Assembly (NCBI GenBank): GCA_964035545.1
Contig: OZ037772.1
Span: forward strand, 5,212,233 to 5,276,232
DNA: 64,000 nt
Source of the DNA: Bugula neritina
Lineage: Eukaryota; Animalia; Bryozoa
Reading direction: 5' to 3'
How positions within the stretch are numbered: the first letter of the stretch is position 1; every line of letters starts with the position of its first letter. Shown in pieces: positions 779 to 49,409 of this stretch. The position numbers and the translations under genes are program-made. A model generated the notes under the pieces. That model did no database searches, was not told the origin of the DNA, and saw only the letters and a list, made by a program, of their open reading frames with translations.

Positions 779-881
779 TGTAAAATAATTGCCCCTATCG
801 GGATTCGAACCACAGACCTCCGGCTTGCAAGCAGGCGCGCTAACCAATTACGCTACAGGGGCTTCGGGATTCCAACCAACA
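779..881 (-). mobile_element. tRNA-like TG...CA cassette, B-type unit (103 bp)
   Basis: Reverse complement TGTTGG...GCCCCTGTAGCGTAATTGGTTAGCGCGCCTGCTTGCAAGCCGGAGGTCTGTGGTTCGAATCCCGATAGGGGC-AATTATTTTACA has A and B boxes, an acceptor-like stem and TG/CA ends. Flanks GTTAT/GGCAT match only 3 of 5. Confidence 0.7.
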
Positions 882-1868: not shown

Positions 1869-1973
1869 TGTAGTGTTGAGTTTACCCAGTGGCCTCTGTG
1901 GTGTAATGGTAGCACACTTGCTTGCAAGCCAGAAGACTTGGGTTCGATTCCCAGTGGGGGCAATTATTTTACA
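1869..1973 (+). mobile_element. tRNA-like TG...CA cassette, A-type unit (105 bp), solo-LTR-like
   Basis: Starts TGTAGTG and ends TTTTACA; perfect 5-bp TSD ATTAC (1864-1868 / 1974-1978); internal A box TGGTGTAATGG and B box GGTTCGATTCC. Confidence 0.85.
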
Positions 1974-4349: not shown

Positions 4350-7300
4350 CTGACGTTTTCAATGGCATAGAACTGTCCTTTGGTTTGAGCATCTTCGTCG
4401 TGTTCGCTGATGCCTACGCCACATTCACTTACAAATTTGAAGACGAGGAAACAAAGGAAATGTCAGTCACCACCACTCCTCATGACTGCAGAGCTATCGC
4501 CATAAGATTTACATCTTCCACTAACCCAGACCTAACTGAAGTAATAGTTGAGGGAATAGGTATGTCTATTGTATAGTGTTTAGTTTACCTAGTACGGCCC
4601 TGTGGTGTAATGGATCTCGGCCCTGTGGTGTACTGAATCTTGAGCAGGTTCACAAGCCAGGAGTCTAGCGACTACAACCCACTTAAATGGAAAAGTGCTG
4701 GTGTTTTGGTGAACCACATTGTTATTTAACGTTATTCGACTTGCTGTCTTGAAGTCATTTGCTCTTAATCATTTTGCAGCTTATATTTTCTTATACTTTT
4801 TGAAAAACACAGCCAGTTCCCCTTCAACAGATTTGATAACAAAGAAAACCCCTATAGTCATTAAAAGTGGGACCAATTGTTGATAATCAAAGAGCATTCA
4901 AGCCATTTTTCTCACTTTTTGTTTGAAACGGAGGACAAAGCCTATAGCTACTTAAGCATTAGTTAGCAAATATAAGAACAGCAAAAATAAGGATGCGACG
5001 ATGAAGCTATGCTCAGTCAGTTTGCAAAACACTTTTACTGTTTAGTAATACCTGTAGTTTGAACATCGCATTATAATAAGGTCTATGCCATCAGATATTC
5101 TGCCTTTAAGACTACCAATTATCACATCTTGCAGTACCAAGATTTAGCCATGACTTTGGATATGGAAGACATCTGGAGCAGTTTACCAGTGGTTCGTCGG
5201 CCTGGTGGATCTTGAAATTGGGAAAAACTTGCTTTTTTGAAAGTTATGCAGCTTTGTTCAAACGTAAGTGTTGCTTTTGCAAGGAAATATATCTTTTGTT
5301 TACTGAGAGTTTATAGGCCTAAATAAAGACGACAAATTATAAACTGAGAGATTGCTTAAAATGTAAATAAAATTGAGATTACTCAGCTCAAATCTATTCC
5401 ACAACCCTCTATATATTACTGCTACTGCTGCTGCAACTGCTGCGCTGCTACCTCTGCACTGCTACTGCTGCTGCTACTGCTGCTGCCGCCGCTGCTGCTG
5501 CAGCTAGCGCTACTTTACCTACCAGTCTGTTCTCTCTATATCCCTGAACACTTAAAATATATTATTACTAAGTTTATCGTTGTCGTATATATGTTTTGCA
5601 TTTGCAAAGTTTTAATTTTTTTCGCTTCTTCTAATCGCTGGTATAAAATAAATATGACAATTTTAAACCTTTACACGAGAGCTGCACTAATTTTATACTC
5701 GCATTGCACAACCAACTATTGCCAAAAGATTTTGAGCTTGAATTAACTAATCTAAACCTGCTTCACTATGATATGACAAACAACTGCACTGAAAACATGA
5801 TGTTGCTTCTTACTTAACGAAGAAGTAAATATCTTGCTCGTTATAAAATGTTTTATTGTTATTTTGAGTTCAGCTGTAAGTGGTGAAGCCAACTTCAGAT
5901 ATAGCATCTTGAGTTCACGGAATTCAACCTCTCAACACACTGCGAGCTGGGCGACGTGCTTCAGTAACCTAGACAGCATTAGTAATATATACGTACCAAC
6001 TTCGAAACTGATATTCAATGTTTGTCTCCAGAGATTGCCAACCAATTTACTGAACATTACAATAACCACCCTAAATCTCTACACTGAATATATTGCTATT
6101 TATGGATCAGGTGGGAACATGCATTGTATTCAATACATAAAAGTTTAGTCTTTTATAGAGAGTCATGAATATGACCCCATTAATATTTTACTGGATATAT
6201 GTAATCAATAACCTAATACTGGATTATACATGATAATATAAGTTAAAGAGTTGGTTTAATAGAGCAAAATGCAAAAATTTATGTTTTAGATAAAAGCAAA
6301 CTAACATTACAGTGATAGTTATGTGAATAGCTACAAAATCTAGCGTGTTTTAAGCATATTATAATAACAATAATTGTTTATGTCATTAGAAATACAGTAG
6401 CAAGTTTGGTTTTAACATGTCGATAACTTCAATTTCACATCATGTTTCCATTCATAGGATTTCAATTCTACAATTATTTACATTCATAAAAGCAGCAATG
6501 CAAATCGGAAAAAACAGTTACCGAAATCCTTTTTCTACTAATATGGATATTATGAATATTTGTGTAATATTTGTAGGATTACAAAAAGAAAAATTATTAA
6601 ACTTGAAAGCATAAAAACAGTTTTGTTTAATGTTGATTAACATTGCAATTTTAAATCATTCAACAAATTTTGCAGTGGCGGAAAACTGGGCAGCAAATCA
6701 GTCGTACTTTCTCTCTGAAGACGAATGTCCTTCAGGACAGGAGTTTTGTCACAACCCGGTAGACGGCCTTTACACAGGACCTCCTTCACCAACACTGGGC
6801 TACCATTGGCTGAACGTTGCTCTACCATTAATATATATTACAGAGCTGCTCATATACACAGGTTCTTATGCTCATTGTGATCAGAGCTCATCTCTCTGCA
6901 GCTTAGGTGAGTTGGTATGCTCTGCTTTGTCTGAAATTTGAAACCAATTCTTATTTTGAAGTGACCACCATTTAGGAGATAGGCAAATCTATTATTGAAA
7001 ACAATTATTATTAGCTAGAAGCTAATGTAGCTAAAAGATTGAACTAATCATTCTACGGTAGACAGTTATTGAATGAAGAACTTAAAATATTGCTGTTGAC
7101 TGAAATTTTCTTTGAGCCGGTTCATGAAAGTTGTGTTATTGCTCTGTTTTGTAAGTAATATGGCAAATGATTGATTTTTATTATGTTTTGTTTCTTGCAA
7201 GCATTAAGCTGTATTGAAGTAGCCATTAGGTTTGCTTCCTTCTTGTGAATAGCGTCAAGTCTTTCAATCTGTAGATTACGGTTTACTACCAGAAGAAGAT

Positions 7301-10300
7301 CTACAGAAAGATGCTTTTATTTACTCTAAGTACTATAATAGTTCTTGGTTGCTGTGTACCTCAAGAGGTCACATGGCAGAGGTTATGGTGCACATAACGT
7401 GTGATAATGACAGCATACCTCTCGCAGACGAACTTTTCATTCTCTCATGGTTCAACATTTCAGTACTAGAGCTGGAAGTTTACGGCATTGGTGAGTTCTT
7501 AAATATTTGATCACTTTTAGTATCATGTTAGCATTGTAATACTCACACTCGGTTGTGAAGAAAGAGAAAGTAAGTAAGGTGAATATTATTGATATGTAAA
7601 AATGTTTGCCCTCACGAGTAATTCAATCTCAGGTGTGAAATAATTTCCCCCACCGGGATTCGAACCACAGACCTCCAGCTTGCAAGCAGGCGCGCTAACC
7701 AATTACACTACAGGAGCTTCAGTCTTCCAAACAACATCCCACCCAGTTCTTTAGAACTGCGTTTGTCCCCACGTACTCTGTCAGCTTTTTGGGCTCCACT
7801 CGCCACTCAACTTTCTGAGAGTACTTCCATAAGACATAGCTTATAAAACAATTGCCCCTACTGGAAATCGAACCTGAGACCTCCGGCTTGCGAGCAAGTG
7901 TGCTAACCATTACACCACGGGGACCACTAAGTGAACTCATCACTACATCAGGCATGCAAACCAGCATGCTAGCTTTTGCAGTATTATAGGGGCTACTAGG
8001 GAATTCCGGCACAGTAGTTTATTCAATTCATTAGAACTCCACTGACCTTGATAATTTCTTGAGCATCGCCAGCTCCTAAAACTTCTAGGACTATTACTAT
8101 ACGCCACTGCGGCTGAAATGGCATGAAGAGCTTGTGCCTCCCCCCTCCATTGGAAATTAGACCATAATATGTCCTTTAACCTTTAAGATAGGGTGCTAAC
8201 TATCATACTATAGAGACTACCACTACACCACACAGCTGTTGCTTTATTGGAATTTGTTATTGCTGCTCCGCAAAAATAATTATTCGCTGACAGTACCAAT
8301 CAACATTTAATGTACATAAAACTATTAGCCACAATGTAATATGCATTATAATACAAACATAAGCATTTGCTGTTTTAAGAATTAATAAACATTCCAAATA
8401 GATTTATATAAAAACCCTTGTGAACAGTTTTAATTTGAAATACTCAACATGGCAATTTTTAAGAAACTTTTACAAAAGTATACATCTTTTGGTTTACAGA
8501 TTAATGATCTGCCTAGTGGGTGTTAGATGACAAAACATTCAACTGTTCAAATTGAAAACTACTTATTATAAATCTGTTATGTTTTTCTCATCAACCTTTT
8601 AGTCTTCAGTTTTACCATTTTCTTGACAGAGTTTAAAGAGGAAGTTGTCATCACCGGCTACGAAGTGAGCTCTGTCGCCATGAATGAGATGCTAGACAGA
8701 ATTCTCAATCGGGAGTATACCCAGGCTAACAACTTGGGTCCTACCAAGCAACCAGACACATCTGCACCTATTCCTAGCATGCTAGACCCGTATATATTAC
8801 TTGAACTGTTGTGTGACGAGAAAATTGAACTTTTAACCATACAGACAAAAGACTCTGATTATGGTAAAACTGAAAAGTATCTCTTTTCTAGTAATTCTTA
8901 CAACATAATTATGTAAATACTAGTTGCCAGCTTTGTTTAAAGATCTGCTCACTATAATATATATTTGCAGATGAACTAAATGGGTTATATTTGGCTGGCT
9001 CAAATAATTACTCAGATGTAAAAAGCTACCAGGTCTTTTATGTTCAAGAAAATTTCTGGTCAAATTACACCATCATTATGCTACCAAATCCAGTTAAATA
9101 CTCCTTTTTAAGACTGTATTTGAAAGGAGATCGACGCCTAGAAATATTAAACATACGTGTATTCCAAGAGACGGGTACAGTATAACAACTATTTATTTTT
9201 AGAGGCGTTTATTTATACTAAATAGGGAGCAGCCATGGTCTAGGGAGTTAAAGCGTTTGCTTTGTGAACACGAAGTCATGGGTTCGAACCCCGCCAAAGG
9301 CCATTGGTGATGTTAGGAAGAGCATCCAGTCATAATTGCTCCGGTGCCTTATTTGAACAAGTCCTTAGCCCGTTCTAATAAAAACTCTTTCCAACAGGGG
9401 TTTCTCACAAGGATAGCGACTATAAACTTGCGTGAGTTTATTTATACTAAATGTCTCGCAAAAATAATAATACAATAATGCAAATTGTAACTGCTATTGA
9501 AAGCATAACTTTGTTCATTGATAAAATTTGCAAGTGATTATTGTAGAGCAAAATAAATTTTACGTGATACTTATTGTTCTCTTGCTTTGTGGAAAATAAT
9601 GGTCCCCCCCCTGGGATTCTAACCCGAGACCTCTGGCTTGCAAGCAAGTATGCAAACCATTACACCACAGGGATCACTGGGTAAACTCATCACTACACTT
9701 TGAAACATAATTTTATGCCTGATTTAGAATAATGGCAAGCAACACATGTCCTTTTCTTTTTTAGGTAAATTTAGACAAACCACAGCTAAAACACTACTAG
9801 AGGCTGCAAGCACAACCTATACTGATCAAACCACTGAAAAAACAGATCAAACAGCTACAACATCGTCAAATCAGTTGACTAACTCAACTAATGAGACATT
9901 TGTTTCAACAGAGACTATAGCTAATACAGGATCTCAGCAGAACAGCACAGAACAGATTAGTTTTACTGAAACTGTTAGAGTGACACCAGAGTTCACAGAG
10001 GCAAAACATTCAACAACAAAACCACCAACAACAACTAACTCTTTCACCTCTACTATTTCTGGAGCTATCGAAGTGACACGAGAACCATTTTTAAAAAGTA
10101 AAACAAGTTATTGGAATCAAGCAGATAGAAGTACAGCTTTTGATGCTTCTACCAGATCTAGCACGTCAAAAGAGACTCCCATTGAAAAATTTACTTCTCC
10201 AGAAAATGTATCAACTTACCAGGATTTAGCGCTCTCAACAGCTTTAAACTCCACAACAAATTCAAAAGATTTGATCACCAACCAACCGACAACCACTGAG

Positions 10301-49305: not shown

Positions 49306-49409
49306 TGTAAAGTTTTTTCGCTTCGATGGGATTCTAACCTGAAACCTTCAGCTTGCAAGCAGGCATGCTAACCATTACTATAGGACCACTGGGTGATTTC
49401 AATGCTATA
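49306..49409 (-). mobile_element. tRNA-like TG...CA cassette, degenerate A-type unit
   Basis: TGTAAA...GCTTGCAAGC...CTATA; 5-bp TSD CAGTT (49301-49305 / 49410-49414). Confidence 0.75.

What the first reader, a model, noticed from the sequence alone, without database searches (positions are those of the whole stretch)
7634..7947. 314-bp TRIM-like element with two non-identical tRNA-derived 'LTRs' under a single TSD
Seen: unit A (106 bp), a 105-bp spacer and unit B (103 bp) in the same orientation, flanked by one TCAGG duplication. A G-rich tract (GAACTGGGTGGGA) abuts the TG of the downstream unit like a PPT. No canonical TGG primer-binding site follows the upstream unit. The two units have different leaders, and each type also occurs alone (A at 1869/9590/49306, B at 779). 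Known: reverse transcription normally makes both LTRs identical. Inference: this is the full-length form from which solo units arise by recombination. The asymmetry implies either inter-subfamily recombination or a non-standard replication route, such as Pol III transcription or priming by the element's own tRNA-like end.
Basis: partly seen in the sequence, partly recalled or inferred. Interest (0 to 1): 0.8.

Follow-up and report, generated by a model that had tools for sequence, protein, structure and literature searches.

The report
Hybrid Helenus-type miniature LTR retrotransposon
The 314-bp stretch is an old, dead copy of a tiny non-coding LTR retrotransposon whose end repeats derive from a tRNA (a "Helenus" TRIM, described in 2024). 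Its two unlike ends show that two sister subfamilies recombined at their shared primer site before it inserted.

Summary
Window 7634-7947 is one insertion flanked by a perfect 5-bp duplication (TCAGG). It has two ~105-bp tRNA-like direct repeats with TG..CA-type ends around a 105-bp core. The core is not single-copy: at least 24 copies in this genome, and it always lies between such repeats. 23 of 36 complete elements have exact 5-bp duplications.

This is a Helenus-type TRIM (tRNA-derived LTRs; Kojima 2024), so the kind is known. There are two subfamilies, A-iA-A and B-iB-B. They share a polypurine tract and a 12-nt primer site placed directly after the 5' LTR. That site is the exact complement of nt 1-12 of the host tRNA-Phe(GAA), not of a tRNA 3' end.

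The window copy is a B-iA-A hybrid that has also lost 9 nt of the primer site. Six loci carry the B-iA-A arrangement and they do not form a lineage. In five, the switch lies at or beside the primer site. An unrelated 260-bp LTR family with the same primer site is joined to iB exactly within those 12 nt. The best reading is an intermolecular plus-strand transfer between co-packaged RNAs. Self-priming by the element's own tRNA-like end is not supported.

First-stage notes of this scan had already flagged the tRNA-Phe 5'-end primer site on other DNA of this genome.

The parts
7629..7633 (.). Left copy of the 5-bp target-site duplication (TCAGG on +, CCTGA in element sense)
   Evidence: 5/5 match with 7948-7952.
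7634..7736 (-). 3' LTR, type A (103 bp). Leader TGTTGTTTGG.., then a tRNA-like body, ending ..TTTCACA.
   Evidence: 92% to a natural type A LTR. All 27 A/B diagnostic columns read A, apart from two undetermined and one B.
7645..7717 (-). tRNA-like domain of the 3' LTR, including a B-box-like GGTTCGAATCC
   Evidence: Rfam RF00005, 30.1 bits against a gathering score of 29. Exact T-arm motif match.
7737..7752 (-). Polypurine tract next to the 3' LTR (sense AAAGAACTGGGTGGGA)
   Evidence: Conserved next to the 3' LTR in both subfamilies.
7737..7841 (-). Internal region, type iA (105 bp; other copies ~115 bp)
   Evidence: 85% to a natural iA. At least 24 genomic copies. Two hairpins are ~92% paired across 28 copies.
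7837..7841 (-). Remnant of the primer-binding site (AGCTA). The next 9 nt (TTTCGGCCT in other copies) are deleted.
   Evidence: Alignment. The intact PBS AGCTATTTCGGC is the complement of nt 1-12 of host tRNA-Phe(GAA).
7842..7947 (-). 5' LTR, type B (106 bp). Leader TGTAGTGATGAG.., then a tRNA-like body with TTTT before the end.
   Evidence: 88% to a natural type B LTR. Diagnostic columns read B through to the last one, 19 nt from the LTR end.
7948..7952 (.). Right copy of the 5-bp target-site duplication (TCAGG)
779..881 (-). Solo LTR, type A
   Evidence: 97% to the type A LTR. Rfam tRNA 42 bits at 790-862. TSD only 3/5.
1869..1973 (+). Solo LTR, type B, with exact 5-bp TSD ATTAC
   Evidence: 96% to the type B LTR. 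Rfam tRNA 47.9 bits. TSD.
9590..9697 (-). Solo LTR, type B, with exact 5-bp TSD CAAAG
49306..49407 (-). Old solo LTR, type B (70% identity), with TSD AACTG

Best explanation
Window 7634-7947 is one old integration of a Helenus-type TRIM: a non-coding miniature LTR retrotransposon of about 320 bp.

Anatomy. Each ~105-bp LTR has three parts: a ~22-nt leader, a tRNA-derived body with A- and B-box-like motifs, and a short tail with a T-run that ends in ACA. In sense (the window's minus strand) the order is 5' LTR, a 12-nt primer site, a ~100-nt core with two hairpins, a polypurine tract, then the 3' LTR.

How it moves. A retrotransposon integrase supplied in trans inserts it, which gives TG..CA ends and a fixed 5-bp duplication. 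This part is shown. By position and complementarity, reverse transcription starts from the 5'-terminal 12 nt of host tRNA-Phe(GAA). This part is inferred.

Why the LTRs differ. The genome holds two subfamilies, A-iA-A and B-iB-B, which share the primer site and the polypurine tract. The window copy has the 5' LTR of B joined to the core and 3' LTR of A. The hybrid most likely formed before integration. In a particle holding one A RNA and one B RNA, the plus-strand strong-stop DNA made on B (LTR plus a copy of the primer) annealed through the shared primer site to the minus-strand DNA of A. That yields B-LTR/PBS/iA/A-LTR. I put about 0.55 on this step; the remainder lies mostly with other pre-integration recombination.

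Fate. The copy later lost 9 nt of its primer site and decayed. It is also present in runs whose flanking DNA is about 8.5% diverged.
For: Identity as an LTR-type element:
- The spacer is multi-copy and always lies between LTR units.
- TSDs are exact 5/5 in 23 of 36 complete elements and 4/5 in 10 more. 7 of 19 solo LTRs are exact.
- Ends are TG..CA.
- In B-iB-B elements (n=30), a 5' LTR is more like its own 3' LTR than like shuffled partners (0 of 2000 permutations). Its own 3' LTR is the single best match in 10 of 30.
- The published Helenus definition and features match.

Primer site:
- AGCTATTTCGGC directly follows the LTR end in all 49 element loci recovered with the exact 13-mer, out of 50 fetched; the 50th is a tRNA-Phe gene.
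- The 12-mer occurs 122 times in the genome, against 3 for the reversed control. Nearly all occurrences are preceded by CA or TA (an LTR end), or by TG at the tRNA-Phe genes.
- The five host tRNA-Phe(GAA) genes begin GCCGAAATAGCT.

Hybrid:
- The 5' LTR is type B and the 3' LTR type A by 27 diagnostic columns.
- B-iA-A recurs at six loci: four simple elements and two arrays. TSDs are 5/5 (window, L023) or 4/5 (L014, L010).
- Hybrids share no more rare alleles with each other (0.80) than with non-hybrids (0.87), and the tree is a star. So they arose repeatedly.
- In 5 of 6, the switch falls in a ~35-nt window: the last 19 nt of the LTR, the PBS and 3 nt after it.
- No LTR with an A leader and a B body was seen, which is the product expected if a hybrid replicated further.
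- L092/L093 join an unrelated 260-bp LTR (LTR-X) to iB. The switch lies inside the 12-nt PBS: regular LTR-X elements have A at position 13, the chimera has the TRIM's C.
Against: - No RNA or cDNA data. No listed holder of the stretch is on record as RNA, and the runs laid were contigs only. Transcription, primer identity and strand transfer are therefore all inferred.
- The tract where A and B are most alike (about 50 nt from the T-arm through the PBS) is also where ordinary homologous recombination would be favoured.
- In L033 the switch lies inside the LTR, not at the PBS.
- In retroviruses, plus-strand transfer is usually intramolecular (my own knowledge).
- For the older A-iA-A set, LTR concordance within an element is not significant (211 of 2000).
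- The mobilising element is not identified.
Confidence: 0.8

Rival explanations
1. It is the same Helenus-type element, but the unlike LTRs came from ordinary homologous recombination. This could be between two finished cDNAs, or as gene conversion of the 5' LTR after integration. No PBS-guided strand transfer is involved.
For: A and B are nearly identical over about 50 nt from the T-arm to just past the PBS. Homology-driven exchange would also cluster there. In L033 the switch lies inside the LTR. Mixed arrays such as B-iA-A-iB-B under one 4/5 TSD (L010) are easier to build by recombination between cDNAs.
Against: Conversion after integration would have to replace the whole 5' LTR, including its leader. 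That leader cannot be aligned between A and B and borders unique flank DNA, so there is no homology on that side. The LTR-X/iB chimera shares only the 12-14 nt of the PBS with its partner. That is too little for ordinary homologous recombination but exactly what strand transfer uses.
Confidence: 0.2
2. B-iA-A is a lineage that copies itself with two different LTRs by a non-standard route. Examples would be a read-through or Pol III transcript covering both complete LTRs, or priming by its own tRNA-like end.
For: Six B-iA-A loci exist at different sites, and those with both ends intact have their own TSDs. The LTRs carry Pol III-type boxes and a T-run.
Against: Hybrids share no private mutations and do not cluster. 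The PBS complement finds at most 7 of 12 matches in the LTRs. The same tRNA-Phe-type PBS serves an unrelated LTR family, which points to a host primer. Regular B-iB-B elements show the LTR concordance expected of standard replication.
Confidence: 0.05
3. It is a dimeric tRNA-derived SINE moved by a LINE, or 1.5 units of a ~210-bp tandem repeat.
For: There are two tRNA-like heads in tandem, spaced 208 bp apart. Longer arrays of LTR-core-LTR-core-LTR exist (L005/L007, L010, L033, L057).
Against: The TSD is a fixed 5 bp and the ends are TG..CA. There is no A-rich or simple-repeat tail. A PBS and a PPT sit at the expected junctions. Left and right units of one element co-vary instead of forming separate left and right clades.
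Confidence: 0.02
4. Two independent solo units landed side by side, and the TCAGG match is chance.
For: Both unit types do occur alone, four times in this window.
Against: The spacer has at least 24 copies and always lies between units. The chance of a 5/5 TSD is about 1 in 1000, yet 23 of 36 elements have one. The same B-iA-A layout recurs elsewhere.
Confidence: 0.01

Closest known systems
Helenus (TRIM with tRNA-derived LTRs; 'TRIMp3'), Kojima 2024, Biology 13:119 (PMC10886601)
   Same: Two short LTRs, each holding a tRNA-like sequence with A/B boxes; TG..CA ends; PBS and PPT between them; no coding capacity. Total length ~320 bp, within the published 311-1263 bp. Many solo LTRs carry TSDs. 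Several families coexist in one genome, and tandem arrays occur.
   Different: - The paper reports 4-bp TSDs, 3'-end tRNA primers and Gypsy partners for animal Helenus. It reports 5-bp TSDs for fungal and plant ones.
- This family sits in what appears to be an animal genome, yet makes 5-bp TSDs.
- Its PBS matches nt 1-12 of tRNA-Phe, a type not listed in the paper. 'Phe' does not occur in its text.
- None of six signature k-mers of this family occurs in the paper's sequence supplement.
- Elements with two different LTRs are not described there.
Cassandra (plant TRIM with 5S rRNA-derived LTRs) and Ajax (nemertean TRIM with a 5S promoter)
   Same: A small Pol III gene fragment is embedded in each LTR of a non-autonomous miniature LTR element. 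Ajax makes 5-bp TSDs.
   Different: The captured gene is 5S rRNA rather than a tRNA. [quoted passage not shown]
Half-tRNA priming in the Copia superfamily (Drosophila copia, yeast Ty5, most fungal Helenus), and Tf1 self-priming
   Same: The PBS lacks TGG and pairs with a 5' portion of an RNA rather than a CCA end. The paired stretch is short: 11 nt in Tf1 (my own knowledge), 12 nt here.
   Different: Copia, Ty5 and fungal Helenus pair with the anticodon stem-loop of the tRNA. Here the pairing is with the very first 12 nt, ending in the D stem. Tf1 uses its own transcript's 5' end; here the LTRs hold no such complement.
tRNA-derived SINEs (SINE2), including dimeric ones
   Same: A tRNA-like head with Pol III boxes, small size, high copy number.
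   Different: SINEs are moved by LINEs, with variable TSDs, a LINE-like or A-rich tail, and no PBS, PPT or terminal direct repeats. None of that fits here.
Recombinant retroviruses and LTR elements formed by strand transfer between co-packaged RNAs
   Same: A chimera whose junction sits at a strand-transfer homology, here the PBS.
   Different: Textbook reverse transcription makes both LTRs alike. A product with two parental LTRs needs an intermolecular plus-strand transfer, which is rare in retroviruses (my own knowledge). Here it would account for about 6 of 20 iA elements sampled.

Membership tests
Helenus / TRIMp3 (Kojima 2024) | Two direct terminal repeats (LTRs) with TG..CA ends bounding a short non-coding element | tested here: met
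   LTRs are 103-106 bp and whole elements ~320-330 bp. In the window copy the 5' LTR ends TA (mutated).
Helenus / TRIMp3 (Kojima 2024) | A tRNA-derived sequence with box A/box B motifs inside each LTR | tested here: met
   Rfam tRNA hits at 7645-7717, 790-862 and 1892-1962. GGTTCGAnnCC motif. ARAGORN calls pseudo-tRNAs. The window's type B LTR itself falls below Rfam's threshold.
Helenus / TRIMp3 (Kojima 2024) | Primer-binding site just downstream of the 5' LTR | tested here: met
   At family level, AGCTATTTCGGC abuts the LTR end and is complementary to nt 1-12 of host tRNA-Phe. In the window copy 9 nt of it are deleted. Actual use as a primer site is not testable here.
Helenus / TRIMp3 (Kojima 2024) | Polypurine tract just upstream of the 3' LTR | tested here: met
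   AGAGAACTGGGTGGGA is conserved in iA and iB. In the window it lies at 7737-7752.
Helenus / TRIMp3 (Kojima 2024) | Fixed short TSD (4 or 5 bp) typical of integrase-mediated insertion | tested here: met
   5 bp: 23 of 36 exact and 10 of 36 at 4/5. Window copy TCAGG/TCAGG.
Helenus / TRIMp3 (Kojima 2024) | Transcription from the Pol III promoter in the LTR | not testable with these tools
   No listed holder of the stretch is on record as RNA, and only contigs could be laid. Indirect hint only: 'C' LTRs switch from a B-type leader to an A-like body exactly at the leader/tRNA boundary.
Helenus / TRIMp3 (Kojima 2024) | Mobilised in trans by an autonomous LTR retrotransposon | tested here: inconclusive
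   A 260-bp-LTR family (LTR-X, ~4.3-kb elements) shares the PBS and has recombined with iB at it. The intact Copia ORFs found do not lie next to this PBS.
tRNA-derived SINE (SINE2) | LINE-type insertion: variable-length TSD and an A-rich or LINE-derived 3' tail | tested here: not met
   Fixed 5-bp TSD; the element ends in ACA right after the tRNA-like unit.
Standard LTR retrotransposon replication product | 5' and 3' LTR of one insertion derive from one template and are alike | tested here: not met
   For the window copy, the LTRs are of different subfamilies: 80% identical over the core and 66% overall. The feature is met for regular B-iB-B elements.

The most novel reading that the evidence does not exclude
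This genome's LTR retroelements, both these TRIMs and at least one unrelated LTR family, start reverse transcription from a 12-nt 5'-terminal fragment of tRNA-Phe. I could not find this priming mode described. The elements with two unlike LTRs would then be natural records of intermolecular plus-strand strong-stop transfer at that 12-nt site. That would show that TRIM RNA and RNA of the LTR-X family are packaged together, which would point to the LTR-X lineage or an RT-bearing relative as the TRIM's helper.
Probability: 0.4. Interest if true: 0.7.

Novelty: new variant of a known kind. Interest (0 to 1): 0.5.

Why it matters
The kind (Helenus/TRIMp3) was named only in 2024 and rests on sequence analysis alone. 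This family adds three things.

1. An apparently animal Helenus with 5-bp TSDs, against the published split of animals with 4 bp and fungi/plants with 5 bp.

2. A primer site matched to the first 12 nt of tRNA-Phe and shared with an unrelated LTR family in the same genome. If that site is used, the range of known retroelement primers widens. It would also link tRNA 5' fragments to priming of reverse transcription.

3. A set of elements whose two LTRs come from different parents, with junctions at the primer site. Such products are rarely preserved. They offer a purely genomic way to see which RNAs share a particle, and so to find the long-sought helpers of TRIMs.

On the practical side, these LTRs are scored as tRNA genes by tRNA finders. 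They would inflate tRNA counts in the annotation of this genome.

Tried and rejected
- Chance adjacency of two solo units: rejected.
- DNA transposon or MITE: the terminal inverted repeat is only 3-4 nt (TGT/ACA), read. Rejected.
- A canonical PBS further inside. TGGCGAGTGGAGCCC in the core looks like the complement of a tRNA 3' end. It lies 44 nt from the LTR, differs between iA and iB, and I did not look for a matching tRNA. Dropped in favour of the abutting 12-mer.
- Self-priming: the best complement in the LTRs is 6-7 of 12.
- A third degenerate unit at ~8130-8240, suggested. Its local alignment score of 13 is no better than shuffles (maximum 15). Not supported.
- Tree of iA plus 3' LTR: an unresolved star.
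- Consensus RNA fold of the core: only the 3' hairpin is predicted, with a covariation term of -0.11. A hand-drawn two-hairpin structure is 92% paired, against 14-50% when slid, with one pair changed on both sides between subfamilies. That is weak support only.
- Position-wise conservation of the LTRs is flat, with no sign that the promoter boxes are spared.
- Autonomous partner. RVT_2 hits (46, several with intact 1320-1404-aa frames) are not next to the PBS. The rve search scored only 150 of 1304 candidates. One (C6:10323234) lies 5.3 kb downstream of a PBS hit at C6:10317895. This was not followed up.
- Metagenome scan with LTR-X end plus PBS. Of two hits, L107 is a bacterial contig (BamD-like gene, no LTR-X homology). 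L108 also lacks LTR-X homology and was not examined further. Both are taken as chance 22-mers.
- Reads: contigs only. They give no transcript ends and no RNA evidence.
- Literature: no paper in the held library combines a PBS with the 5' end of a tRNA. That is not proof of novelty.
The census therefore rests on loci L001-L106.
Full report
WHAT IS THERE

Window 7634-7947 lies between two copies of TCAGG, at 7629-7633 and 7948-7952. It holds two same-strand units that are 80% identical over their 64-nt core. Both units read as tRNA-like on the minus strand. Rfam's tRNA model passes threshold at 7645-7717(-), and at the solo units 790-862(-) and 1892-1962(+). The element's sense strand is therefore the window's minus strand. 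From here on, 5' and 3' refer to that strand.

The host is a 216-Mb eukaryote. I take it for an animal on three grounds. Its tRNA-Phe(GAA) is, as far as I recall, identical to the vertebrate sequence (my own knowledge). A box C/D snoRNA SNORD36 lies in the window. An earlier follow-up note of this scan calls it an animal genome.

IS IT MORE THAN CHANCE?

- The 102-nt spacer has at least 24 copies in the genome at 75-88% identity.
- The unit has at least 538 candidate copies.
- In all 20 loci fetched with the spacer, it adjoins a unit on at least one side, and on both sides in 18.
- Aligning the copies fixes the ends: every unit starts TG and ends (A)CA.
- Of 36 complete elements in my sample, 23 have an exact 5-bp duplication and 10 more match 4 of 5. 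Of 19 solo units, 7 are exact.

The composite therefore inserts as one piece, by an integrase-type reaction.

Refined coordinates: 3' LTR 7634-7736, internal region 7737-7841, 5' LTR 7842-7947.

779-881 is type A. 1869-1973, 9590-9697 and 49306-49407 are type B.

THE FAMILY

There are two regular subfamilies.
- A-iA-A: leader TGTTGTTTGGAAT.., a body with TAATTGGTTAGCGCGCC, and a ~115-bp core iA.
- B-iB-B: leader TGTAGTGTTGAG.., a body with TAATGGTAGCACAC, and a ~120-bp core iB.

Some B-iB-B copies have identical or near-identical LTRs, so B has been active recently.

A third LTR type, 'C', has a B-type leader and an A-like body and goes with iB.

In B-iB-B elements the two LTRs of one insertion are more alike than shuffled partners (0 of 2000 permutations). 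A 5' LTR's own 3' LTR is its best match in 10 of 30 cases. That is the signature of LTR-type replication. For the older A set the test is not significant (211 of 2000).

Both cores end in the same purine-rich tract, AGAGAACTGGGTGGGA, next to the 3' LTR. Both begin with the same 12-mer, AGCTATTTCGGC, directly after the LTR's ..ACA.

THE PRIMER SITE

That 12-mer is the exact complement of nt 1-12 of the host's tRNA-Phe(GAA). Five genes carry it, all starting GCCGAAATAGCT. It occurs 122 times in the genome, against 3 for a reversed control. Nearly all listed occurrences fall into two groups: those preceded by CA or TA (an LTR end), and those preceded by TG, which are the tRNA-Phe genes read backwards.

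Complementarity stops at nt 12 on one side. On the other side, the base before the tRNA is A in four of the five genes, while position 13 of the site varies between families.

The LTRs contain no complement of the site; the best match is 6-7 of 12. Self-priming is therefore not supported.

I infer that a 5' fragment of tRNA-Phe ending in the D stem serves as primer. This is not shown.

The window copy has lost 9 nt of this site, so it could not be copied again.

WHAT KIND IT IS

This is the published Helenus group: TRIMs whose LTRs carry a tRNA-derived sequence, placed with Cassandra and Ajax under 'TRIMp3' (Kojima 2024, PMC10886601).

All structural criteria are met at family level (see Membership tests).

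Differences from the paper:
- Animal Helenus there have 4-bp TSDs, PBSs matching tRNA 3' ends, and Gypsy partners.
- 5-bp TSDs belong there to fungal and plant families, whose PBSs mostly match anticodon loops.
- tRNA-Phe is not mentioned.
- Six signature k-mers of this family are absent from the paper's sequence supplement.

I therefore file it as an undescribed Helenus family with an unusual primer site.

WHY THE TWO LTRs DIFFER

By 27 columns that separate A from B, the window's 5' LTR is B up to the last diagnostic column, 19 nt from its end. Its core is iA from the first diagnostic site, 3 nt after the PBS. Its 3' LTR is A.

The same B-iA-A layout occurs at six loci: window, L002/L023, L014 and L019 as simple elements, and inside the arrays L010 and L033. 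TSDs are 5/5 (window, L023) or 4/5 (L014, L010).

The hybrids share no more rare alleles with each other (mean 0.80) than with regular A elements (0.87). The tree is an unresolved star. They look like repeated independent products, not a lineage.

In five of the six, the switch falls in the ~35 nt made up of the LTR's last 19 nt, the PBS and 3 nt after it. In L033 it lies further inside the LTR.

Reciprocal forms exist but are rarer (C-iB-B in L086). That fits B RNA being the more abundant partner.

No LTR with an A leader and a B body was seen. That is what a B-iA-A parent would produce by standard replication, so hybrids seem to be dead ends.

Conversion of the LTR after integration is unlikely. 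The A and B leaders cannot be aligned and the leader borders unique flank DNA, so there is no homology on that side.

THE MOST TELLING CASE

L092/L093 are one event, later duplicated. They carry an unrelated 260-bp LTR ('LTR-X', TGTAATG...CAACA; at least 313 candidate copies). It is followed by the 12-mer and then by iB positions 13-87.

Regular LTR-X elements are ~4.3 kb, for example C7:3181578-3185884. They share only the 12-mer with the TRIMs and have A at position 13. The chimera has the TRIM's C.

A switch inside a 12-nt homology that is exactly the primer copy is what an intermolecular plus-strand strong-stop transfer predicts. The donor gives the LTR plus the primer-templated PBS. The acceptor gives everything after it.

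The same step explains B-iA-A. It implies that the two RNAs shared a particle.

I put about 0.55 on this step, about 0.2 on cDNA-level or other homologous recombination, and little on the remaining rivals.

AGE AND STATE OF THE WINDOW COPY

Its LTRs are 88-92% identical to the natural copies used as references, which are young in the case of B.

Contigs of three other public runs cover the left junction (7186-7691), and contigs of two of them (X2, X6) the right junction (from 7921). They differ from the window's flanks by about 8.5% (43-44 of 506 positions). The insertion therefore predates that divergence.

No listed holder of the stretch is on record as RNA.

LIMITS

Counts are lower bounds from three biased samples, chosen by spacer similarity, by type A LTR similarity, and by exact PBS.
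- The helper element is unidentified. RVT_2-bearing Copia elements with intact frames exist but do not adjoin this PBS.
- Earlier unchecked notes of this scan call the C8:~162,440 element a Gypsy primed from the tRNA-Phe 5' end, and mention ~4.37-kb RT-less Gypsy-like elements. I confirmed only the LTR pair and the PBS at that place.
Natural copies served as references throughout.

Noticed in passing
L092:541-813 (G000:C5:8190218-8190490) and L093; regular copies at G000:C7:3181578-3185884, C8:158401-162707, C2:20503672-20507978: An unrelated LTR family ('LTR-X': 260-bp LTR TGTAATG..CAACA, at least 313 candidate copies, LTR pairs ~4.02 kb apart) uses the same 12-nt tRNA-Phe 5'-end primer site. 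L092/L093 are a chimera of an LTR-X LTR with the TRIM core iB, joined inside that site. Its coding content could not be read.
   Followed up: partly
L010:1382-1940; L033:1499-1997; L005:919-1704 (=L007); L057:1054-1620: Arrays of LTR-core-LTR-core-LTR with shared middle LTRs, some mixing subfamilies. L010 is B-iA-A-iB-B under one 4/5 TSD (TAAGA/TTAGA). How such mixed arrays form is not explained.
   Followed up: partly
L055, L050, L057, L079, L086, L090, L091 (LTR positions): A third LTR type ('C') has a B-type leader joined to an A-like tRNA body and always goes with core iB. The switch sits exactly at the leader/tRNA-like boundary. That is where a Pol III start, and so a U3/R border, would be expected. 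It could be a replicated recombinant or an ancestral intermediate.
   Followed up: partly
G000, e.g. C1:29405466-29406191, C4:15496821-15497546, C7:4965004-4965744: Copia-type RT (RVT_2) hits inside uninterrupted frames of 1320-1404 aa. So apparently intact Copia elements are present, but none lies beside the tRNA-Phe-type primer site.
   Followed up: partly
window 9007-9083 (-): An Rfam hit to the box C/D snoRNA SNORD36, right at threshold (30.1 bits against 30). It lies about 500 bp from the solo LTR at 9590-9697.
   Followed up: no
window 7186-7691 and 7921-8030: Public runs X2 (labelled 'symbiont metagenome', 2016), X6 and X7 hold this locus. All three cover the left TRIM junction and X2 and X6 the right one, but the flanks are ~8.5% diverged. 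This points to a sister lineage or a very divergent haplotype of the host.
   Followed up: partly
window 20000-44000: G+C rises from ~34% to 44-47% across this stretch. It is probably gene-dense; I did not examine it.
   Followed up: no
L081:690-1030 (G000:C3:29093575-29093915): A degenerate tRNA-like LTR plus primer site is followed by a ~230-bp minisatellite of GTGTAGT/GTATT-type units in place of the normal core.
   Followed up: no
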